A stretch of DNA of 64,000 nt. It comes from Guillardia theta CCMP2712. Taxonomy: Eukaryota > Protista > Cryptophyta. Positions within the stretch are counted from its first letter, which is position 1; each line of letters begins with the position of its first letter. The position numbers were made by a program, and so were the translations under genes. Location: the NCBI RefSeq assembly GCF_000315625.1, contig NW_005434472.1, positions 1 through 64,000 on the forward strand, in the 5' to 3' direction. Shown here in pieces: positions 1 to 32,520 of this stretch. The notes beneath the pieces are model-generated. The model was not told the origin of the DNA and made no database searches. It saw only the letters and a list, made by a program, of their open reading frames with translations.

Positions 1-354
1 CCTTCGCTGTATCCCTTAACGTCTCTTCTTCTTCCTCCTCCTCTTCGTCGCTCTCTGTTCCTTCCTTCGTCACGATGTCCTCCTCCTCCTCCTCCTCCTC
101 CTCCTCCTCCTCCTCCTCCTCCTCCTCCTCCTCCTCCTCCTGCCTCCAACGCCGCAGCCACCGCTGCAGCCTTCGCCAGCTACTCAAGATGTCAGGAGGG
201 GGATGGGCACTCGAGAGCGACAGACCTTTCTATGCTGCTTCCATGCTTCCTGCGAGGAAGAACGTGAGAAAATTAGGACAAGGAGAGGGGAGAGGCAGCA
301 ATGGGGGAAAGGTTTAGGGATGAGGAGGATGAGAAAGGACGAGCGAGGATGAAG

Positions 355-409
<55 letters not shown>

Positions 410-727
410 ACGGGAAGGAGGAGTGACTAGGAAGGCAGAGAAGCTTACCCTCGCGGTACGGGGAGGGGCCTCCAGCAGAATGTCAGATTGTCGTTGACTG
501 GGTTCAACCGGAGAGAGAGAACTCAGAAGGCGATGCGAATTGATTGAGGCCAAAGATGCGGGAGGAGGAGGAAAAGCAGCAGTAGCAGAAGCAGCAGTAG
601 AAGCTTCAGCTCCTCCAGCTCCTCCAGCTCCTCCAGCTCCAGCTCCAGCTCCAGCTCCAGCTCCAGCTCCAGCTCCAGCTCCAGCTCCAGCTGGAGCAGC
701 AACAGGATCCTAAGAACAGTCGAGGAG

Positions 728-1489
728 TTATGGAGCCTCCCTTGGGTGCCTCTTTTGCCTCCTCCCCCTCCTCCTCCCGTCCCACCAGCGCCCTCTCACC
801 TCCTTCCCGTTGGTCTCCGGCATGCTGATCCCTTTCAAGCTCAGCAGTCGTTCGATCTGACCGTTCATGTGAGAATCCCCTCCCTCCACTCCCTCCCCTC
901 CCCTCCCCTCCCTCCCCTCCCTCCCCTCCCTCCCCTCCCTCCCCTCCCTCCCTTCTCTTCCTCTCTCTCCCCATTCCTCCTCTGCATCCTCACCTTCACT
1001 CGTAGTATGTCGCTTCTCTCCGACGCTGCCAAGAGTTCGGCCACCTGCTCCTCGAGCTTCTTCACTCGATCCAACAACTGCCTGTTGCTCTCTGTGTCGT
1101 CTTCCCACTTTCCACCGTCACAGAAGAACTTCTCGCATCCCTCAGACGACGCAGGCTTGGTTTGATTCTCCAACATCAGCAACTGCGGAGCGATCAGCCC
1201 TCCCAAGTACCCCGAACCACTCTGTCCGCTATCGCCGCCGCCGCCACCACCACCACCACTGTTGTGTCCTCCTCCCTCCTCCTCCCTCCTCCTCCCTCCT
1301 CCTCCCTCCTCCTCCCTCCTCCTCCCTCCTCCTCCCTCCTCCTCTCTCCTCCTCTTGTCCCACCTTCAGCCCGAAAAGAGCAGCTGCTGTGGATGAGTTG
1401 CTGTGATCATGACTCTCGTTGCTGATGCCAGCAGCGAGCTGACGCTGAAGGGGGTTGTCAGAGGGATAAAGATGGGGACAGAGGAGAGG

Positions 1490-1521
<32 letters not shown>

Positions 1522-1522
1522 T

Positions 1523-1609
<87 letters not shown>

Positions 1610-1626
1610 TAGGCAGGCAGGCAGGT

Positions 1627-1709
<83 letters not shown>

Positions 1710-4700
1710 CGACCTGGACGTAGAGCACGAGATGGTAACGCATCATCTCCTCGAAACCTTCCGAACTGAGACGGCGAATCAGAGAGGGAAGGGAGGGCGG
1801 GGAGGAGGAGGCAGGAACGAGAAGGAACGACAAGCCGGGTGCAAGAGGGAGAAGAGACTGGGTGGGGGGTAAGAGGGGAGCAAGTACAGCTGACGGGGAG
1901 AGAGGGGGGAGGCAGGACTCGAGGAGCAGGAGCAAGACAGGAGGAGCAGGACAGGAAGAGCAGGAGCAGGAGCAGGAGGAGAAGCGACGTGCGTCCAGGG
2001 GGCAGGAACAGGGACCTTAGACATCCGTTGGAGTTGCAGAAGGAGAAGTTGGGCCCAGCAGTGAGGACATGGTAGTCATCGGGAGAGAGGTGAATCTGAC
2101 CCACGAGCGGAAAGTAAGTCGGGGATGGAAGGGGAGGAAGAGAGGGGGAGGGAGGGAAGGGGAGCAAGAGAGAGGGAGGAAAGGGGGGGGGAGTGGAGGA
2201 GGAGGGAGGGAACGAGTCCGGCAGGGCGTCAGCAGCTCGCAGAGGTTTGAGAGGTTGTCAAGGTCTCGTACCTGAGCATCCTTCGAGTTGTGGGTGAGTT
2301 TCTTCAGGCCATCTGCAAGCTCGTTGAACGTGACTGGCTCTGCGTCAGCAACCTCCTCCTCCTCCTCCTCCTCCTCCTCCTCCTCCTCCTCCTCCTCCTC
2401 CTCTTCGTTCGTCCCCCTCGCCCATCCCCTTCCTCCCTCAAACGTTTCCCCTTGCTCACTTTCTCCGTTGCTGTCCAGGTCGAGCTTCTGGTGACGAGCG
2501 GGTTGATCAGAGCACGAAGGCAGAGGGCGGAGGAGGTAACACAGGGAAGGAGAAGAGCAGGCAGTGAGGCATCAGGCTGCAGGAGCGAGAGTGAAGGGAG
2601 AGGGGGATGGAGGAGGCAGCAGGAGGCCAAGGAGACAGGCAGATCGCAGCAGGCAAGGGACATGAGAAGGGTCCAGACCTCGTACAAGCTTAAGATCCTT
2701 GCGGAGAGATCCGCCGAGGTCTTGAAGCTCGCGAGGTTGCAGAGGAGGGGATCCAGCGCTGATTCCTTCTTGAACGAAACCTTGAGGCAAAAGGTCACCG
2801 TTACCTCTCACTGCAGGACCCTCCTTCCGTCTTCCCTTGCCCACTACCACCACCACCACCACCACTGTCCCCTCCTCCTCCTCCTCCTCCANNNNNNNNN
2901 NNNNNNNNNNNNNNNNNNNNNNNNNNNNNNNNNNNNNNNNNNNNNNNNNNNNNNNNNNNNNNNNNNNNNNNNNNNNNNNNNNNNNNNNNNNCCGTCCTCC
3001 TCTCTCCTCCACTCCCACTCCTCCTCCCTCCTCCTCTCCTCTCCTCTCCTCTCCGCTCCCTCTCCTCTCCTCTCCTCTCCTCTCCTCTCCTCTCCTCTCC
3101 TCTCCTCTCCTCTCCTCTCCTCTCCCCTCCTTTCCTTGCTCACCTCCATCATGCTCTCTGCCATGCTGCTCTTCACTTCTGCTGTCGTCTGCACGAACTC
3201 ATCGAGCAACACGGCCACAACTGGAATTCGCATCTCAGGGAGGAAACGGAACATCCCGGTCACCGATGTTCATCATGACGATCCCCGTGATCAGGTAGTA
3301 GCTAACAAAGAAGAAGTTGATCTGCAGGAGGAAGCAAACTTGAGAAGGATGCAGGCACTTGCAATGGAGCAGCAGAGGGTAGGAAGGAGGGTGGAGGACA
3401 GGCATAAGAGAACTCGATAGGAAAGTTGGAGCAGGAGCAGAATTGGCGGCGCAGCAGCAGCGGCAGGGCTCGTCAACAACCGGCAAATCATGGGAGAAGA
3501 CTCCAGTGTTCATAGGGCGAACGATGTTCGTCACCCAACCGTCTCCTGTCGCGATCTGAAACATCTGATGCCCCAGTTAGCACGGCAGGAGAGCGAGCGG
3601 GAGGGAAAGGAGAGGAGAGGACAGAGGTAGCTGGAGCAGGAGCGGCAAAGATAGAGGTAGGGGGGGCAGGAGCGGGAGCGGGATAGGCTAGGACGGTGGT
3701 ACCGAGCGAGGATGGGAAAAGGAGTGAGATAGCGGGAGCGGCAGCGGAAAGGACGGAGGTAGCAGCGGCAGAAAGGACGGAGGTAGCGGCAGCGGGAGAT
3801 GAAGGGGGGGGGGAGAGGAAAGGTACCGTGAACAGGGCGAGAGAGAAGCTGCCGAAAAGCTCCTCGTCCTCGGCTCCGAAGAAGATCACGGCCATCACCT
3901 TCAACCGCCCAGCATCAGGCCCAGCACATCTCCGGCTGGTGACCCACCGCGTAGAGAGATGAGAAGAGGAGGAGGATGCAGAAGGCGTTGGCGACCGGGA
4001 CGATGGCGGACGTCATGGACTGAACGATAGCGCGCAAGGAGGGCATCTTCTTGAACAAACGAACCACCTGCGTCCCACTAAGTCACCGAAGACTCAAAAC
4101 TCCTGCTCCTTCCTGTCCAAAATTGTACACAGCTGTCTCGACCTCCTCCTGTTTTTCTCTCAACTGGCCCAAAGGATTCTACATCATCCCCTCCTGACTT
4201 TCCTCACCCCATCCTTGTTCTTCTTTCTCACCCTTGCCCTCCTCCTTGTTCCCCTCCTCCCAGATCCTTGTCCTCTTACCCGAAAGATACGGACGAGACG
4301 GAGGAGGCTCACTCCAGGGAGGTTCTGGATCATGAGAGAAACGATGGAGATCACGACGACGATGAAGTCGAAGACCTTGCAAGACACCAACAAGTCACTT
4401 CTCTCCCCGCCTCTTCATCTCTTTCCCTCACATTCCAACCGTCCAGGAAGAAGGAAAGGGGGCCGGTTGATATCAGGTTTGCGACGAGCTCCAAGGAGAA
4501 GATGACTATGAAGAAGATCTCGAGGGAATCGAACACATGGGACGTGCTGCTCCCGCTCGTTGGGAGCAGCTGGTAGTTGAAAACACTGACGAGAAAGTTG
4601 AACATGATGAGGAAGGCAAGGAAAAACTGGACGGGAGAGGACGTGTAGATCGTCCTGACACGGTACTGAAGTCTCGACCGCTTCCCCTGCATGGACTTGA

Positions 4701-5253
4701 GCCTCTTCTCCTCCTGCCTCTTGCAGTCCTGGATAGCACGCGACCACAGCATGCACGCCTCGTTGCTGGAAGCTCGGAGGGTGTAGGTCCTCCCGCTATT
4801 GAACCCGTTTGCCACTGTGAAGATGTTGAAAACCCGTGCCTTCGAGGGAGGGGTCTCTCCCACGTTCCCCAGCATGAACGTGCTGGAGGACTGCTTCTTG
4901 TCAGCGCGGGCATGCGCGAGGAACTCTTCCTCATGCTCCATCGAGACCGTCACCACGTCCATGATCGGGATCACGTCCGAGACTTCTGCCCCTGGTCTCC
5001 GCGCGAAGGAGATGGCGTCTCTACCGAGCGCTACATACCTCGGCCGCCAAGTCAGCTCCAGAGTCTGCTTCTCCAGCTCCCCCTCCAGCACCAAGTCGTC
5101 CCCCGTCGGCAGCTTCCCCCATCCCATGGACAGCCCGCTGAATCCTCCCGGGGCTTGCGGGGAGAGGAGATCGTCCGCTGCAAACTCATCTTCGGTCTCC
5201 GCGGAGATGTCTACTTGCAGGCCTTTGCTGCCCCGCCAGGTTGAGGTAACCAT
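728..5253 (-). CDS. Single-domain (6TM) voltage-gated cation channel (EukCat/BacNav/CatSper-like) with N-terminal PH domain, C-terminal EF-hand(s) and coiled coil; multi-exon
   Basis: Exon 5253-4432 encodes a PH-like domain (LEGELEKQ..WRPRYVAL..RTYTLRASSNEACMLWSRAI) followed by S1-S2 and FFLDGWN. Exon 4375-4280 gives S3/S4 VFDFIVVVIS..LLRLVRIFR and the exon from 4067 continues VVRLFKKMPSLR. Pore loop FGSFSLALFT|MFQIATGDGW; S6 FFVSYYLITGIVMMNI|VVAVLLDEF; EF loop DLDSNGEITFNE across the intron at 2459-2334. Start and 3' end uncertain. Confidence 0.85.
1489..1710. repeat. Compound tetranucleotide microsatellite (GCCA)n-(GGCA)n inside a channel intron
   Basis: Directly visible tandem repeats. 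Confidence 0.95.
2892..2991. other. Assembly gap (100 N)
   Basis: N run flanked by CT-rich microsatellite. Confidence 1.
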
Positions 5254-6136
5254 GCTGAATGCTCTGTGGGTATGGGATGAGGAGGGGAGGGAAAGAGAAC
5301 GGCAGGCCGGTAGGTACCAGTCAAGGAGGAGAAGGAGGGAGGCGGTGGGGAGCAGGCAGGGCGTCCGCAGGAGGGGAGCAAGAACGAGCAAGCAAGATCA
5401 GTGGGTCTGCAGCAGTCCAGTCAGCGCAGGAACGAGAAATTCGAAGACAGTCTGAATGAAAACTTCCACTAAGAACTAGAGGGGAGAAGACAAGTTGTTC
5501 TCTCAGGCGAGGAAATGATAGTACAAGAACCAATGAACATGTAGAAGGAGCAGGGACTGCTAGTCACGAGGACTGTTGCGTGATGACAGCAGTAACAGGG
5601 CAGGACTCTCAGTTGAGGGCAGATGAGGGAGGTGAAGGAGAGCGAAAGGGACGTACAGTCTGCTCCATGAAGCCGCTCAAGGGACTGTAGGACAGCTGTA
5701 GGAAGGAGAGCAGTATGGGTCAGAGTATGGGTTGGCGGGAGCAGGGCGGCAGGGGAGTGGGCAGGTGTGTGGGGAGGGCAGGAAAACAAAATTTGACTGA
5801 AAGGATGATAACCCTCTACCCCACTTTTGACTGGACCAGACTGGGTACTCCATGGTGGGGTCCGGAGATCATGGAACGAGATATTTCAAGCTCGCCTCAA
5901 GTATTTACTAGAAGAAGAATAAAGACAGTCATAATTGATATCGAGGATATAGGAAAGCTCTGTTGTTTCGAGTCTGGACTTCAAGTTCGCCTGGGTAATT
6001 AAGGAAAATTGCGTCCAAAATTTGAATATGTAAGTCATGTTTCCATGAGTCGTACTCAAATACAAGCGGGTGTGCTGTCGTTACAAGCACAATCGTTATT
6101 CTGCAACGGTTGGTAACTGTTCCACGAAGAGGCGCG

Positions 6137-12881: not shown

Positions 12882-15800
12882 ATGAAGAAGCATATTATCC
12901 TGAAGCACGCGGGCACCTCCCCCCTCCCTGCTTCTCCTCCTCTTCCTTCGTCTCCTTCATTGAACCCCAAGGAGTCTTGTGGCCTCACGGTGCATTCTCC
13001 CAGCCAGCCGGCTGGGTGGGAAACCGTCTCCGATGGATGGATTGGCTTCAAGAAACTTCGCAGATTTCTGGAACATGGAGGGAATGGCGCAGTGGTTCCC
13101 GATGGTGAAGATAATGGAACCAAAAGTCATGGACTTGTAGATAGAGTTAATTGCTCTTCACACGGAGGAGTGGTTGTCGAAAGCAAACAGACCGGGAAGC
13201 CCGAAGTCCCTGCCCTGCAAAGCGATCACAAGGCGGCAGAGAATGATGCTGAAGGTAATGATCTTCTCTCCCTCGTGTTCGCATGAACGACTTTCCTGAT
13301 TTGTTCTGCTCAGGAGCGTGTGGGCCGAAGGAACTGGCTTCTGAAAATGCGGGGAAGGTTTGGCCGAAGAATGGAGCACAAACAGAGGTCAAATCGCACG
13401 AGGATGTTGAGACTCCCCCGTCGGAGCATGCTGCTAAGGTGAAATCTTCTTGTCGACCATCTCATAGACCTGACATGTTCCCCCTTCATTTTCGATGCTT
13501 CCAGAAGGAAAGTTCAAAAGCCTCAGAAGAGCCTTTAGCTCAAGCGGACGAAGTTCGCAGTGAAGATGTGTATGTCAAGGAGGATGTGCAAGAAAAATCA
13601 ACCAGCCTTAGAGAAGACCGAAAATCTCAGAACAAGGGTGAAGAAATGGAAATGCCTGCATTGGAGGCAAAGATTGGTGGGGCGTGGTTCGACATCGAAC
13701 TTCTCGGTGTTGATCCAGACGAGGACTTGTTCCATGTTATGGGAAGGGATACGGGTGAAAAGGAATGGGTGACTTGCCAGGAGGTGAGATTGCAGTGCCA
13801 GCCATACGAGAACAAGCCTAGCGTTGGTACGACAGTCTGCTTGTTTCGGACCGCCGACAATGAACAGTTGTACTACGACGCAGTTGTTGATAGTGAGAAA
13901 AAGGACAACAAATTCTTCGTCACACTGCTTGATGGACCAGAGAAGGGTAAAAAGGTTGTTGCCAAGCTCCAAGACATCTATGAAATCAGCAGCGAAAAGC
14001 TACCTATCTCGTCATTACGATCGTGGTGCAAGGCAGTGTACAGAAAGGTTGATTCGCTACCAAAAGTTGTAAACCTCAAGAAGGGTGATTATGCCATGTT
14101 CGAAGCTCCAGGAAACGAGAACTTTCGAGTTGCTCAGCTTCGGGAGCCCTACACAGCTGAAATTCAGGAAGAGGTCGACGAGGACGAAGATGGACCTGAG
14201 ATTCGTGTTCGGTGGATGTTCACTGCGCAACAACTCAAGAAAAAGCGAAAGAAATTGCTCAAAGGGGAGGACACAGACGAACATGAGGTATTTGTTTCAG
14301 ACATGGAGTCGTTGATAGATGCCAGACTCATCGTAGATCAATGCTTCGTGAGTATTGTTGAACACCCTCCGGACACAAAGGATTGGGCCAACAATCGGTT
14401 TTTTGCCAACAGGGTTTTTGATCGTTCAGAATACAAGATAGTTTCTATTTCTGATGAATCCCTTGATCTGAAGCTAAAGAAAATCGTGAAGAGGCTTCTC
14501 TCTCGCAACAGAAAAAACGGTGATAAGGTCCACGATGCAGAGGATGGAAACGACATTGATTCGCATGAAGTCCAGAAAGAAGATTCGACCCCCGCACATC
14601 GGAAATCAAATCATTCAGATGCTTCAATTGATCATCCTTCCAAGAAGTCGCTTCCTTCCGGTGAAGAAAGCAGTGAAGATTTCACCAAGAATCCAAAGCA
14701 AGTAAAGGATAGGCTATCTAACAAAATGCCAGCTAAGGAGAATGCTGTTCAAGTTGTGGCGCACGACGATGAAAAGCGGTCTCCAAGCGAAAAGAGCCAC
14801 AACAAGGGAGATGAGAATGGTAGTCGCAAACGAAAAAGTAGTGAACTGGATGATACCGCGCGTGCTGAGAGTGAAGGGAGGTGCAAGAGTGAAACGAACA
14901 AGCGCAGTCCTAAGAAATCACATGGGATCTCGCCAGCGCAGGTGTCGGCAGATCGAAAAGTTAAGCTGGAGAAGGAGCCTCATTTGCAGAAGATAGGCAG
15001 TACTACGAAACGCGAAGATGTTGATGAGAAAAGGGACAAGACGACGACGAAGTCAGATAGTAACAACAAACGGTCTGAAAAGAATGTTGTGATGGAGCTC
15101 TCAATCCCCAAAGTGGGGTCGAAGCAATCAAAACCATCCTCAGGTGAAAATGAAAAGAGGATAACCAGCCACGAGAAGGCTTCTGGAAACAAGAAAGAAA
15201 TCAAGAGAACAGAAGAGCTTCATACCAAGAATGACAAGACATATCCCCCAAAGCACAATGCTTTAATTAACACGTCTCTAACTTCAGACATGAATTCGCA
15301 TGCAGATACACAAGCTAAGACGGGCGGCATTAGGTCGGCAGCGACAATCCAGGCAATCCAGGGAAATTCTTCAAAAAAGTCCTCCTCGGGGGGGATACAG
15401 CAAGAGCATCATAAGCAGACTGAAGGAGGCAAAGCTTGCAGTCAATCTGCAAGTTCACTTCCATCCAAGGTCGATAATGCACATGTGAAGTGCAACATCA
15501 ATAACTTGGGTCATGATGTTGAAATTTCAAAGGGGCTAGATGACGATGGAACAAGTCGCAACTTTGACGCTTTGACGAATTCCTGTGAACTAAAATTAGG
15601 ATCCCCGCGCAAAGACTCAGTTGAGATGTACGACCCAGCAGAGATCTCTGACGATCTCGACGCCACAGTTGTGAAGAAGCGTACAAGTCCAGTTTTTGAT
15701 CATGGCCAGACTGATTCTGAGTCGGGACGGAAATACGGACCGGAAACCATGTCGGACTGTCCCGCAACTGATGAAGCTGACCATCAAGAATCGCAGAACA

Positions 15801-28829: not shown

Positions 28830-31800
28830 ATGGAATTCAAACTTCATGGGTGGAACTTCTCTGCCATCAAAGCGCCCATCATTTCATCGCATGATTCCGA
28901 CAAGTGTGATCCTTGTTTTGTTTCTTGATGGCATTTGTGCTGAAACTCGATGAATCACATCAGTTGGACAAGAGAGTTGGATATGACACTGCCTGAAATG
29001 TGCTTCAGCAACTCAGTATTACGTATAGGGTGAGCAAGCATTCCTAATACGCCGTTGATTGAATTTTTTTTCACAGGAACGAGGGCATTGGCATGCAAAT
29101 AGAATTCAATGCTTATGATGCTTTGAAAACGGTGCTGCATGATTTTCTTGACACTCCTCGATTGATTTTTCCTAGTGCCCTAGCTCATCAGACTTGCAAG
29201 TGAGCGTGTCTGAAAGATGGAAAGCTAAGGCACGGGCGAAAGTTCCTGAAGCACACCAGTACGACTGGACGTATAGCACAAACTATAAGTAACCATCTTC
29301 ATGATACAGCTGTGTTTAAATTCTTGATTCTCAGGGGGACATTCAAGGATACTCGATCAGGGGAGCTAATCCAAGGAGCTGTTACAGAAAAGCGCATCGA
29401 TTTCGAAAGCCTCAAGGTGACCATCTTTCACATGCACTAGAAGTACATTATTTCAGTGATCTCTATTTACTTTCATGACAATTTAACGCACGTGCCTTTG
29501 CTTGCCATATTTGTTTGGGGGCTGTCTTGCTGTTTTTCACTTGTTGGTCTAGCCTCGTGCAGGAGAGAGTATCTTATGGTCGTCCGATGTTATTTTGTTT
29601 GAAGATGAACTTCATGATAATGGTAAAAACATTGTTTTCCACTGCTAAGATCTTCAGAGCTTATCTTCATGCAGGAACCAGTCAGCTGACTGTAAGAATT
29701 CGAGTTACCAATTCTTATTTTTATGTGTTGCAACGTCTCTGGGTGAGGGTTGATGGAGTGATATTTCGTCTAAAAGAGACCCGCCTGCATTTTCGTTTTG
29801 GAGACGAGTTTGCGCTACGACAATTCACGGAGAAATCGTCAGATTATCAAACGATTCTGTCTGGTTGCACCCAGAAGGAATTACGTGAGGGCATAATCAA
29901 TGAGCCGGATCAACTATCAGGACGGCTAGAGATGAAAACCGACGAGACAAAGATATTCTCCTTCATGCCTCACAGTTTGCAAACTCCCGGAAATACTATT
30001 GTAAGTGATGCCCTTTTTTCTCTTTCTCCCAAAACTGAACGAAAATTCAAAGTGACAGCCTTTTCAAAATTCAGGATCGCCTATTTGAGGGCCAAAGAGA
30101 ATCAAGAGCTGATACAATTGTATCAGGAGGGGAGCCTGATATACAACAACTTCAAAGAAACAAAGAAACTCAACATAACGATATAGAAAAAAGCAATAGA
30201 ATAGCAGAACAACAATTCAAACAAAAATATGGGAACGCCAAGCCGAACGCGGGGGCGCTGCTTCAGCGGCAGCGGCAGCACGAGACGAGGTATTTCGACT
30301 CCGGGGACGCCTTCTCGAAGAAGGGGTCAGGGCCAGGGAAGGCGGAGGAGAAGCTTGAGCCACTTGCGGTAGTCCAGGGACAGCTAGAGGAGGGGGGAAC
30401 GGAGGAGGACCAGGAGATCGCTCGGAAGAACGCGGAGGCTGAGGCTGCGTTCAAGCTGAAGTTTGGGAACGCCAAGCCGAACGCGGGGGCGCTGCTTCAG
30501 CGGCAGCGGCAGCACGAGACGAGGTATTTCGACTCCGGGGACGCCTTCTCGAAGAAGGGGTCAGGGCCAGGGAAGGCGGAGGAGAAGCTTGAGCCACTTG
30601 CGGTAGTCCAGGGACAGCTAGAGGAGGGGGGAACGGAGGAGGACCAGGAGATCGCTCGGAAGAACGCGGAGGCTGAGGCTGCGTTCAAGCGGAAGTTTGG
30701 GAACGCCAAGCCGAACGCGGGGGCGCTGCTTCAGCGGCAGCGGCAGCACGAGACGAGGTATTTCGACTCCGGGGACGCCTTCTCGAAGAAGGGGTCGGGG
30801 CCAGGGAAGGCGGAGGAGAAGCTTGAGCCACTTGCGGTAGTCCAGGGACAGCTAGAGGAGGGGGGAACGGAGGAGGACAAGGAGATAGATCGGAAGAAAG
30901 CGGAGGCTGAGGCTGCGTTCAAGCGGAAGTTTGGGAACGCCAAGCCGAACGCGGGGGCGCTGCTTCAGCGGCAGCGGCAGCACGAGACGAGGTATTTCGA
31001 CTCCGGGGACGCCTTCTCGAAGAAGGGGTCAGGGCCAGGGAAAGGCGGAGGAGAAGCTTGAGCCACTTGCGGTAGTCCAGGGACAGCTAGAGGAGGGGGG
31101 AACGGAGGAGGACCAGGAGATCGCTCGGAAGAACGCGGAGGCTGAGGCTGCGTTCAAGCGGAAGTTTGGGAACGCCAAGCCGAACGCGGGGGCGCTGCTT
31201 CAGCGGCAGCGGCAGCACGAGACGAGGTATTTCGACTCCGGGGACGCCTTCTCGAAGAAGGGGTCAGGGCCAGGGAAGGCGGAGGAGAAGCTTGAGCCAC
31301 TTGCGGTAGTCCAGGGACAGCTAGAGGAGGGGGGACGAGGAGACCCGGACGAAGTCGCGAACGGTCCGGAAACGAGACCGACTCGGAAGAACGCGGACGC
31401 TGAGGCTGCGTTCAAGCGGAAGTTTGGGAACGCCAAGCCGAACGCGGGGGCGCTGCTTCAGCGGCAGCGGCAGCACGAGACGAGGTATTTCGACTCCGGG
31501 GACGCCTTCTCGAAGAAGGGGTCAGGGCCAGGGAAGGCGGAGGAGAAGCTTGAGCCACTTGCGGTAGTCCAGGGACAGCTAGAGGAGGGGGGAACGGAGG
31601 AGGACCAGGAGATCGCTCGGAAGAACGCGGAGGCTGAGGCTGCGTTCAAGCGGAAGTTTGGGAACGCCAAGCCGAACGCGGGGGCGCTGCTTCAGCGGCA
31701 GCGGCAGCACGAGACGAGGTATTTCGACTCCGGGGACGCCTTCTCGAAGAAGGGGTCGGGGCCAGGGAAGGCGGAGGAGAAGCTTGAGCCACTTGCGGTA

Positions 31801-32520
31801 GTCCAGGGACAGCTAGAGGAGGGGGGAACGGAGGAGGACCAGGAGATCGCTCGGAAGAACGCGGAGGCTGAGGCTGCGTTCAAGCGGAAGTTTGGGAACG
31901 CCAAGCCGAACGCGGGGGCGCTGCTTCAGCGGCAGCGGCAGCACGAGACGAGGTATTTCGACTCCGGGGACGCCTTCTCGAAGAAGGGGTCGGGGCCAGG
32001 GAAGGCGGAGGAGAAGCTTGAGCCACTTGCGGTAGTCCAGGGACAGCTAGAGGAGGGGGGAACGGAGGAGGACCAGGAGATCGCTCGGAAGAACGCGGAG
32101 GCTGAGGCTGCGTTCAAGCGGAAGTTTGGGAACGCCAAGCCGAACGCGGGGGCGCTGCTTCAGCGGCAGCGGCAGCACGAGACGAGGTATTTCGACTCCG
32201 GGGACGCCTTCTCGAAGAAGGGGTCAGGGCCAGGGAAGGCGGAGGAGAAGCTTGAGCCACTTGCGGTAGTCCAGGGACAGCTAGAGGAGGGGGGAACGGA
32301 GGAGGACCAGGAGATCGCTCGGAAGAACGCGGAGGCTGAGGCTGCGTTCAAGCGGAAGTTTGGGAACGCCAAGCCGAACGCGGGGGCGCTGCTTCAGCGG
32401 CAGCGGCAGCACGAGACGAGGTATTTCGACTCCGGGGACGCCTTCTCGAAGAAGGGGTCAGGGCCAGGGAAGGCGGAGGAGAAGCTTGAACCCGTTTCAG
32501 TTTTTCGTGATTTCTCGTAA
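28830..32520 (+). CDS. TIPRL: TIP41/TIPRL (PP2A regulator) fused to 10 tandem endosulfine/ARPP19-like repeats
   Basis: Spliced exons MEFKLHGWNFSAIKAPIISS|..LPEMCFSNSVLRI|..IEFNAYDALK|..YDWTYSTNY|..ILFEDELHDNG|TSQLTVRIRV..QRLWVRVDGVIFRLKETR match TIP41. Intron 30001-30074 leads in frame to ..AEQQFKQKYGNAKPNAGALLQRQRQHETRYFDSGDAF repeats. 5' end is next to a gap and uncertain; 1-nt insertion at ~31041-31043. Confidence 0.85.
30231..32489 (+). repeat. Coding tandem array, 234-bp (78-aa) unit, 10 FDSGD motifs
   Basis: TATTTCGACTCCGGGGAC at about 30291, 30525, 30759, 30993, 31228, 31486, 31720, 31954, 32188, 32422; one 258-bp variant unit and one 235-bp unit. Confidence 0.95.

What the first reader, a model, noticed from the sequence alone, without database searches (positions are those of the whole stretch)
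728..5253. PH-domain-fused single-domain voltage-gated channel with TGDGW filter and EF-hand
Seen: one 6TM unit with S4 RLVRIFRVVRLFKK (R/K every third residue), filter T-G-D-G-W at 3549-3535, a PH domain in the same exon as S1-S2, a canonical EF loop DLDSNGEITFNE, and a distal coiled coil (RQLLDRVKKLEEQVAELL). Established: BacNav filters are TLESW, CatSper filters are TxDxW, and single-domain EukCat channels occur in algae. Inference: a homotetrameric, probably Ca2+-permeable channel integrating voltage, phosphoinositide binding (PH) and Ca2+ feedback (EF-hand). An N-terminal PH domain is not a feature I know from characterised members of this family.
Basis: partly seen in the sequence, partly recalled or inferred. 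Interest (0 to 1): 0.78.

Follow-up and report, generated by a model that had tools for sequence, protein, structure and literature searches.

The report
PH-domain-fused single-domain voltage-gated channel
A gene of the cryptophyte alga Guillardia theta encodes a bacterial-type, one-repeat voltage-gated cation channel that carries a lipid-binding-type PH domain in front of its voltage sensor and a calcium-binding EF-hand behind its pore, a cryptophyte-wide design I found in no paper.

Summary
On the minus strand, 5253 to about 800, lies a 15-exon GT-AG gene. Exon 1 is one open frame holding a Pfam PH domain (33 bits, cut-off 25.1) followed directly by S1-S2 of an Ion_trans unit. AlphaFold and Foldseek give a confident PH fold. 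Later exons give S3-S6, a four-arginine S4, the filter TGDGWVT (3549-3529), one canonical EF loop and a heptad coil. The assembly gap (2892-2991) lies inside intron 7, and homologues show no missing block there. The organism is Guillardia theta. The core is a single-domain EukCat/BacNav-type channel; its closest solved single-domain relative is NavEh of Emiliania huxleyi. Every named cryptophyte relative carries the PH domain. No green-algal, haptophyte or dinoflagellate relative does. About 45-50 paralogues exist in this genome. This scan already found the family on other DNA of this genome (s1-439498, s1-435496, s1-434737). Special to this copy: an Akt-like phosphoinositide motif (K62...R70-P-R72) and a filter with the Gly4 and Val6 that make bacterial CavMr calcium-selective. 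Lipid gating, calcium selectivity and tetramer make-up are inferred. Transcript evidence for this copy could not be obtained. Verdict: a new variant of a known kind.

The parts
4432..5253 (-). Exon 1: start codon, disordered N-terminal tail (aa 1-45), PH domain, basic helical linker, S1, S2 and the start of S3, all in one open frame
   Evidence: The Hanusia phi orthologue P0033 aligns from residue 1 at 72% identity.
4690..5106 (-). PH domain (aa 50-188): seven strands plus a C-terminal helix that runs on towards S1
   Evidence: Pfam PF00169, 33 bits. AlphaFold2 pLDDT above 90 in the core. All top Foldseek hits are PH domains; TAPP1 1eaz has TM 0.84.
5038..5070 (-). Basic motif of PH strands beta1-beta2: K62 ... 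W69-R70-P71-R72 (LEKQTLELTWRPRY)
   Evidence: Aligns to Akt2 LHKRGEYIKTWRPRY (weak, E 1.3). Across 69 family members position 62 is basic in 84%, position 70 in 48% and position 72 in 59%.
4465..4638 (-). S1 (aa 206-229) and S2 (aa 236-263) of the voltage sensor
   Evidence: Pfam Ion_trans at 207-274. Helices in the AlphaFold2 model. PDB matches to Cav/Nav voltage-sensor domains.
4280..4375 (-). Exon 2: S3 and the first half of S4 (LLRLVRIFR)
   Evidence: Pfam Ion_trans profile positions 70-104.
3948..4067 (-). Exon 3: second half of S4 (VVRLFKK), the S4-S5 linker and the start of S5
   Evidence: Pfam Ion_trans profile positions 106-144.
3827..3898 (-). Exon 4: end of S5 and the turret
   Evidence: Gap-free alignment to the transcript-derived paralogue P0019.
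3481..3564 (-). Exon 5: pore helix and selectivity filter. TGDGWVT is at 3549-3529.
3264..3321 (-). Exon 6: S6
3144..3220 (-). Exon 7: end of S6 (VVAVLLDEF) and the start of the cytosolic linker
2781..3143 (-). Intron 7, which contains the assembly gap 2892-2991 flanked by purine-rich microsatellites
2679..2780 (-). Exon 8: linker and the entering helix of EF-hand 1
2460..2487 (-). Exon 9: first half of the EF-hand 1 loop (KLDLDSNGE)
2272..2333 (-). Exon 10: second half of the EF-hand 1 loop (ITFNE) and the exiting helix
2016..2095 (-). Exon 11: start of the degenerate second EF-hand (FCNSNGCL)
1714..1765 (-). Exon 12: end of the second EF-hand and a conserved LYVQ helix
1364..1444 (-). Exon 13: conserved RQLA...LFGLK segment
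994..1182 (-). Exon 14: linker and a heptad coil from 1086 (NRQLLDRVKKLEEQVAELL...)
800..856 (-). Exon 15: continuation of the coil (IERLLSL...). It ends either at the GT donor at 799 or by read-through at the TAA at 730-728.
   Evidence: The 3' end is not resolved.

Best explanation
**Shown**
- This is an intact nuclear gene of Guillardia theta for one subunit of a single-domain (6TM) voltage-gated cation channel of the EukCat/BacNav type.
- Domain order: short N-terminal tail, PH domain, basic helix, S1-S6, an EF-hand pair (one canonical loop), then a C-terminal heptad coil.
- The PH domain and S1-S2 share one exon.
- The PH fold is predicted with confidence. Its C-terminal helix runs almost unbroken into S1.
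- The PH-bearing design is common to all named cryptophyte relatives and absent from the related channels of green algae, haptophytes and dinoflagellates.

**Inferred**
- Four subunits form the pore, as in NavEh and BacNav.
- Depolarisation moves the S4 helix (R300, R303, R306, R309, K312) and opens the gate.
- The filter TGDGWVT (Asp at the high-field-strength site, Gly4, Val6) passes Ca2+, probably with preference over Na+.
- The PH domain sits directly under the voltage sensor. Through K62, R70 and R72 it binds an inner-leaflet phosphoinositide, so lipid state tunes gating or keeps the channel in a particular membrane domain.
- Entering Ca2+ feeds back through the EF-hand next to the gate.
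For: **Gene model**
- 15 exons, all GT-AG, continuous frame.
- Colinear with full-length homologues, and gap-free up to residue 425 against the transcript-derived paralogue P0019.

**PH domain**
- Pfam 33 bits against a cut-off of 25.1.
- AlphaFold2 mean pLDDT 81 with the core above 90: seven strands, then helix 164-188 leading into 191-204 and S1 206-229.
- The 50 best Foldseek matches are all PH domains, led by the phosphoinositide binders TAPP1, DAPP1, ARAP3 and Akt.
- TWRPRY is shared with Akt2, and the basic positions are conserved in the family.

**Channel**
- Ion_trans hits exon by exon.
- The intronless paralogue has PH, one Ion_trans unit and an EF-hand in a single 757-aa frame.
- S4 and the filter are conserved across 86 relatives.
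- PDB by sequence: Cav3 domains score best; the best single-domain hit is NavEh 7x5v.

**Selectivity inference**
- From 10.1101/2020.04.29.068528 (E305D), PMC7041947 (Gly4, Val6) and PMC10120453 (a glycine at HFS+1 goes with Ca2+ selectivity).

**Distribution**
-.
- The Hanusia phi orthologue is 72% identical, with the PH motif unchanged.
Against: - The only RNA hint is an unverified 'RNA?' run that holds 0.51 of the sampled words.
- Exon 1 finds no annotated G. theta protein in the word search.
- No lipid-binding, current or assembly data exist for any member of the PH family.
- Many PH domains bind lipids weakly or bind proteins instead.
- The second EF loop is degenerate.
- With 45-50 paralogues, heteromeric pores are possible.
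- The 3' end is unresolved and close to a contig end.
Confidence: 0.62

Rival explanations
1. The channel is as described, but the PH domain is only an address or anchor. It would bind a lipid or protein that places the channel in a given membrane, such as the flagellum, the periplast-associated plasma membrane or the ejectisome region. It would have no direct effect on gating.
For: PH domains commonly act in targeting (general knowledge). The family has 45-50 paralogues with variable beta1-beta2 basic residues, which fits different addresses. Variants with an added C2 domain exist (P0235).
Against: The PH C-terminal helix continues almost rigidly into S1 at high confidence. That places the domain against the voltage sensor rather than on a flexible tether.
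Confidence: 0.3
2. The pore is non-selective or Na+-preferring rather than Ca2+-selective.
For: Diatom EukCatA channels with Asp at the high-field-strength site are non-selective (PMC10120453). The EhEUKCATB1 E305D mutant became permeable to Ca2+ and Ba2+, but it was not shown to exclude Na+.
Against: Gly4 and Val6, the two residues required for high Ca2+ selectivity in CavMr, are both present in TGDGWVT.
Confidence: 0.3
3. The subunit works only in heterotetramers with paralogues, as CatSper1-4 do, so its own filter and PH domain are just one quarter of a mixed pore.
For: There are 45-50 paralogues in one genome, some in tandem pairs. The filters vary among them as TGD[G/S/N/A]W.
Against: NavEh and the coccolithophore EukCatB channels work as homotetramers when expressed alone (PMC9114117; 10.1101/2020.04.29.068528).
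Confidence: 0.2
4. The locus is a silent or decaying copy of a large family, or the gap hides a disruption.
For: There is no read evidence for this copy. Some paralogous loci carry in-frame stops.
Against: All 15 exons are open with canonical splice sites. The Hanusia phi orthologue keeps 72% identity, with the highest conservation in the PH core and the membrane helices. No block is missing at the gap junction.
Confidence: 0.07
5. It is one repeat of a two- or four-domain channel.
For: Some PH-less relatives from environmental samples have two Ion_trans units. G. theta also has four-domain channel genes.
Against: Only one Ion_trans unit matches on this contig. The start codon coincides with that of the orthologue. 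The EF-hand and coil follow S6 as in the full-length single-domain homologues of 698-757 aa.
Confidence: 0.02

Closest known systems
EukCatB / NavEh (EhEUKCATB1) of Emiliania huxleyi, PDB 7X5V
   Same: [quoted passage not shown] The filter has the form TG[E/D]xW. It is the best single-domain PDB match of the closest paralogue. The literature places cryptophyte single-domain channels in clade B.
   Different: NavEh has only a 13-residue N-helix before S1 and no PH domain. Its filter TGESWSE is Na+-selective. In my tree the PH-bearing cryptophyte rows are separated at 98% SH-aLRT from the PH-less clade that holds the haptophyte, dinoflagellate and TGESWSE-type rows.
CavMr (Meiothermus ruber) and other BacNav-type channels (NavAb, NaChBac)
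   Same: One-domain architecture, a four-arginine S4, a C-terminal coil and the T-x-[D/E]-x-W filter. Gly4 and Val6 of the CavMr filter TLEGWVD recur in TGDGWVT.
   Different: These are prokaryotic channels with no PH domain and no EF-hand. CavMr has Glu, not Asp, at position 3.
CatSper1-4
   Same: Single-domain channels with TxDxW filters that are Ca2+-selective.
   Different: CatSper is an obligate heteromer with many auxiliary subunits and weaker S4 helices. It has no PH domain or EF-hand. Relatedness was not tested here.
Individual domains of four-domain Cav3/Cav1/Cav2/Nav channels
   Same: These give the highest sequence scores in the PDB for S1-S6.
   Different: They have four linked repeats in one chain and no PH domain.
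Phosphoinositide-binding PH domains (TAPP1, DAPP1, Akt, ARAP3)
   Same: Same fold (TM up to 0.84 normalised to the target) and the K-Xn-R-x-R motif, with TWRPRY identical to Akt.
   Different: This PH domain has a 35-residue insert between strands 5 and 6 and is fused to a membrane protein. Lipid specificity is unknown.
Voltage-sensing phosphatase (Ci-VSP)
   Same: A voltage sensor joined in one chain to a phosphoinositide-handling module. It matches S1-S2 in the PDB.
   Different: In VSP the module is a C-terminal enzyme and there is no pore. Here it is an N-terminal binding domain on a complete channel.

Membership tests
Single-domain voltage-gated cation channel (BacNav/EukCat type, Pfam Ion_trans) | One S1-S6 unit per polypeptide | tested here: met
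   The Ion_trans pieces are colinear over exons 1-7. There is no second unit on the contig. The intronless paralogue has one unit in 757 aa.
Single-domain voltage-gated cation channel (BacNav/EukCat type, Pfam Ion_trans) | S4 with a basic residue at every third position | tested here: met
   R300, R303, R306, R309 and K312.
Single-domain voltage-gated cation channel (BacNav/EukCat type, Pfam Ion_trans) | Pore-loop filter T-x-[D/E]-x-W | tested here: met
   TGDGW at 3549-3535.
Single-domain voltage-gated cation channel (BacNav/EukCat type, Pfam Ion_trans) | Tetrameric assembly and voltage-gated current | not testable with these tools
   Needs expression and electrophysiology or cryo-EM.
EukCatB clade | Phylogenetic placement with haptophyte, pelagophyte and cryptophyte clade B, apart from EukCatA, EukCatC, BacNav and CatSper | tested here: inconclusive
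   The tree of 86 cores has no EukCatA, BacNav or CatSper references and is unrooted. The PH-bearing rows are split from the PH-less clade that holds the Prymnesium, Effrenium and TGESWSE-type rows. Papers place cryptophyte channels in clade B, but their identifiers were not available.
EukCatB clade | C-terminal EF-hand pair and coiled coil | tested here: met
   One loop matches the EF-hand pattern at aa 480-492 and the second is degenerate. Homologues give Pfam EF-hand hits at the aligned place. The 3-4 heptad spacing is seen by a simple register count only.
EukCatB clade | Na+-selective filter TGESWSE, as in the characterised coccolithophore members | tested here: not met
   The filter is TGDGWVT. 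Asp-type filters are the rule in the cryptophyte rows.
PH domain (PF00169) | Profile match above Pfam's gathering score | tested here: met
   33 bits against 25.1. The orthologue scores 38 bits.
PH domain (PF00169) | Seven-stranded beta sandwich capped by a C-terminal helix | tested here: met
   AlphaFold2 secondary structure and pLDDT. Foldseek top hits.
PH domain (PF00169) | Basic K-Xn-[K/R]-x-R motif of the phosphoinositide-binding subclass | tested here: met
   K62, R70 and R72. The motif definition is from my own knowledge of Akt, GRP1 and PLC-delta PH domains.
PH domain (PF00169) | Actual phosphoinositide binding | not testable with these tools
   Needs liposome or lipid-overlay assays.
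CavMr-type Ca2+-selective filter | Gly at position 4 and Val at position 6 of the seven-residue filter | tested here: met
   T1 G2 D3 G4 W5 V6 T7. The requirement is taken from PMC7041947. Selectivity itself was not tested.

The most novel reading that the evidence does not exclude
The PH domain sits in the 'chain' of a ball-and-chain inactivation device.

- Many members of the family, and of the PH-less sister clade, begin with a motif of the form M-A-A, several hydrophobic residues, then a K/R cluster. A strict form of the pattern is met by 18 of 92 PH-family N-termini, against 1.8 expected from shuffled tails.
- This is like the N-helix that plugs the open gate of NavEh (PMC9114117).
- In cryptophytes a phosphoinositide-binding PH domain was inserted between this ball and S1. 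Membrane lipid state could then hold back or release the inactivation particle, giving lipid-switched fast inactivation of a voltage-gated Ca2+ channel.
- This copy has only a weak version of the ball (MVTSTWRGSKGL). It might therefore be a slowly inactivating member.
Probability: 0.12. Interest if true: 0.8.

Novelty: new variant of a known kind. Interest (0 to 1): 0.62.

Why it matters
- Single-domain EukCat channels are the proposed basis of fast electrical and Ca2+ signalling in major phytoplankton groups. Only diatom and coccolithophore members have been characterised.
- In cryptophytes the whole expanded family (about 45-50 genes in G. theta) has a PH domain built rigidly onto the voltage sensor. 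I found this combination described for no voltage-gated channel.
- If the PH domain binds phosphoinositides, these channels would read voltage, lipid state and Ca2+ in one small homomeric protein. That would make them a natural, genetically simple system for studying lipid control of voltage sensors.
- They would also be a possible compact Ca2+-channel tool, because this copy carries the filter residues that make CavMr Ca2+-selective.
- Cryptophytes are known for channelrhodopsin-driven photobehaviour, and these channels are candidates for the voltage-gated step downstream.

Tried and rejected
**Read laying**
- No splice or expression evidence could therefore be obtained.

**Joined model**
- The joined spliced protein has no reference. 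It was never sent to a database, fold or family tool.
- It was used only inside local scripts, against sequences already fetched.
- The database steps were done exon by exon, or with by-reference paralogues (L004 ORF/P0001, P0019).

**Searches that gave little**
- Pfam on the short exons 4-10 alone gave nothing, because the pieces are too short and the EF loop is split.
- phmmer of the PH segment against the PDB gave only a weak Akt2 hit (E 1.3). The fold search settled the PH question instead.
- The word search with exon 1 found only the Hanusia fragment, not an annotated G. theta model.
- The ESM Atlas gave one sub-threshold cluster with Ion_trans and PH in 17% of members, and no taxa.
- Supplementary tables of the two EukCat papers are not held, so I could not check which G. 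theta genes they placed in EukCatB.

**Readings rejected**
- Two genes wrongly fused: rejected, because PH and S1-S2 share one open frame.
- One repeat of a multi-domain channel: rejected (see rivals).

**Not run**


Full report
**What is in the sequence**

I read the minus strand from 6500 to 1 and translated it in three frames. This gave a gene of 15 exons: 5253-4432, 4375-4280, 4067-3948, 3898-3827, 3564-3481, 3321-3264, 3220-3144, 2780-2679, 2487-2460, 2333-2272, 2095-2016, 1765-1714, 1444-1364, 1182-994 and 856-800. Every intron starts with GT and ends with AG, and the reading frame runs through all junctions. The introns are largely microsatellites.

- Exon 1 is a single 274-codon open frame.
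- Pfam finds a PH domain at residues 55-178 (E 9.3e-8, 33 bits, cut-off 25.1).
- An Ion_trans match covering S1-S2 follows directly at 207-274 (29.7 bits, cut-off 25).
- Exons 2 and 3 continue the same profile at positions 70-144.
- The PDB sequence search matches residues 193-274 to voltage-sensor domains of Cav and Nav channels and of the voltage-sensing phosphatase.
  - S4 is LLRLVRIFR|VVRLFKK.
  - The filter TGDGW is at 3549-3535.
  - The EF loop is DLDSNGEITFNE, split over exons 9 and 10.
  - The coil NRQLLDRVKKLEEQVAELL is also there.

**The assembly gap**

The gap (2892-2991) lies inside intron 7 (3143-2781), between purine-rich repeats. Exon 7 ends and exon 8 begins in phase 0. In a local alignment with twelve full-length or long homologues, the stretch from the end of S6 (LLDEF) to the conserved ALDPL motif is 25 residues in the model and 27-33 in the others. 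No conserved block is absent. The two sides therefore belong to one gene and are in frame as modelled. A small hidden exon cannot be excluded without cDNA.

**Organism and gene family**

The window is the first 64 kb of contig C202 of an 87.1-Mb assembly.

- An intronless paralogue (L004, a 757-aa open frame) is 100% identical to GUITHDRAFT_134639 of Guillardia theta CCMP2712.
- That paralogue shows the whole design in one frame: a weak PH match, one complete Ion_trans unit (129 bits), an EF-hand and a C-terminal helical region.
- Exon 1 matches 52 places in the genome. About 17 of them cover PH plus S1-S2 in one frame, and about 30 more start in the second half of the PH domain.
- Of the 33 best matches to a channel core, 26 lie beside such a PH match.
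- The same contig holds no second Ion_trans unit.

**Relatives elsewhere**

- An exhaustive profile search with exon 1 gave 743 proteins at E<=0.001 and 162 at E<=1e-10.
- The best hit is a Hanusia phi protein, 72% identical from residue 1, with the PH motif unchanged.
- Full-length PH-Ion_trans-EF proteins occur in Hanusia phi, Hemiselmis andersenii (auto-named 'PH domain-containing protein') and Cryptomonas curvata. They also occur in unnamed environmental assemblies.
- A family-specific PH profile hits every named cryptophyte channel. It hits none from Cymbomonas, Pyramimonas, Prymnesium or Effrenium.
- Pfam finds no PH domain in the N-terminal extensions of those PH-less proteins.
- In a maximum-likelihood tree of 86 channel cores, a clade of 38 PH-less rows is split off with 98% SH-aLRT. 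It includes the green-algal, haptophyte, dinoflagellate and TGESWSE-type rows.
- The eight 'PH-less' rows on the other side have at most 81 residues before S1, so they are truncated models.
- The tree is unrooted and lacks EukCatA, BacNav and CatSper references. It shows one gain or loss of the PH domain, but not the formal clade name.

**The PH domain**

- AlphaFold2 was run on exon 1 with an alignment of 68 relatives. It gave mean pLDDT 81 and pTM 0.68, with the PH core above 90.
- The model has seven strands, then a helix at 164-188 that runs with only short breaks into helix 191-204 and S1 at 206-229.
- All 50 best Foldseek matches in the PDB are PH domains. They are led by phosphoinositide binders: TAPP1 (TM 0.84 by target, rmsd 2.2), DAPP1 and ARAP3 with inositol tetrakisphosphate, and Akt.
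- The beta1-beta2 segment LEKQTLELTWRPRY aligns with LHKRGEYIKTWRPRY of Akt2 (a weak hit). From my own knowledge, the K-Xn-[K/R]-x-R residues there are the phosphoinositide contacts.
- Across 69 family members the three positions are basic in 84%, 48% and 59%.
- The helix between the PH domain and S1 carries 11 K/R in 42 residues.

**The pore and likely selectivity**

- The filter is TGDGWVT. In relatives the form TGD[G/S/N/A]W dominates, and S4 keeps four arginines.
- Published work on relatives gives the basis for the selectivity inference:
  - EhEUKCATB1 (TGESWSE) is Na+-selective. Its E305D mutant passes Ca2+ and Ba2+ (10.1101/2020.04.29.068528).
  - A survey links a glycine at HFS+1 in one-domain channels with Ca2+ selectivity (PMC10120453).
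- This copy has Asp3, Gly4 and Val6. Ca2+ permeability is therefore likely and Ca2+ preference plausible, but neither has been measured.

**Closest known**

- By sequence the core of the nearest paralogue scores best against single domains of Cav3 channels. Among single-domain structures the best match is 7x5v, NavEh of Emiliania huxleyi.
- NavEh is a homotetramer with an N-terminal helix, S1-S6 and an EF-hand-like C-terminal domain. The N-helix (hydrophobic turns followed by an arginine cluster) plugs the open gate (PMC9114117).
- EukCatB channels are reported from haptophytes, pelagophytes and cryptophytes, with an EF-hand pair and a coiled coil.
- None of the papers I could search mentions a PH domain on such a channel.
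- The channel core, EF-hand and coil are therefore known. The PH domain is the new element.

**A further lead**

- Many N-termini of the PH family, and of the PH-less sister clade, read M-A-A, several hydrophobic residues, then a K/R cluster (for example MAAILLAAKRRRL and MAAVIFMKRR).
- A strict form of the pattern is met by 18 of 92 PH-family N-termini, against a mean of 1.8 and a maximum of 8 in 1000 shuffles of the same tails.
- This resembles the NavEh ball. It suggests that the PH domain lies in the chain between the ball and the channel.
- This copy and its Hanusia orthologue have a weakened version (MVTSTWRGSKGL and MVSSVWRNSNGL).

**Limits**

There is therefore no read-level evidence for splicing, expression or the 3' end.
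- One run guessed to be RNA holds 0.51 of the sampled words of 3144-5300, close to the exon share. This is only a hint.
- The joined protein model was used only in local scripts and never in a database, fold or family tool.
- The scan had already noted and followed up this family on other DNA of the same genome. My results agree with those notes and were obtained independently here.

**Verdict**

This is a real, apparently intact member of a large cryptophyte-specific family of PH-domain-bearing single-domain voltage-gated channels. It is a new variant of the known EukCat kind. Lipid gating, Ca2+ selectivity and subunit make-up remain to be tested.

Noticed in passing
P0009, P0185 and P0089 (environmental proteins of the PH-less clade): Each has two Ion_trans units in one predicted protein. 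They are either genuine two-domain channels or tandem genes called as one.
   Followed up: no
P0235 = GUITHDRAFT_135169: A G. theta paralogue carries a C2 domain (PF00168) in addition to the PH remnant and the channel. The scan noted a C2-PH-channel gene elsewhere (s1-442617).
   Followed up: no
P0012 and P0018 (ENA assemblies): Here a PH domain appears after the channel and EF-hand. This is most simply the end of one gene joined to the start of the next in a tandem array.
   Followed up: no
P0033, P0034 and P0035 (Hanusia phi, EukProt): These predicted proteins stop within a few residues of the place matching the end of exon 1 (277, 306 and 321 aa). This suggests unspliced or partial transcripts in that data set.
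   Followed up: partly
G000, for example C128:115630, C42:208195, C55:33458 and C4:139368: G. theta also has channel genes with open frames of 1,700-1,960 aa that match the core several times. They are presumably four-domain Cav/Nav-type channels.
   Followed up: no
window 1-5300: Almost every intron of this gene is filled with microsatellites, including (GGAGAG)n, (GGAGGA)n, (CTGC)n/(CTGG)n at about 1700-1500 and (GGAGGGAG)n. The assembly gap sits in one of them.
   Followed up: no
N-termini of the PH-channel family (for example P0005, P0041, P0073 and P0019) and of PH-less relatives (P0222, P0182): They share a recurrent start: M-A-A, a hydrophobic stretch, then a K/R cluster. This resembles the inactivation N-helix of NavEh.
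   Followed up: partly
window 13661-14460 and 28830-32520: Other notes of the scan on this window (a SAWADEE/BAH reader; a TIP41-endosulfine array) lie outside this gene and were not examined.
   Followed up: no
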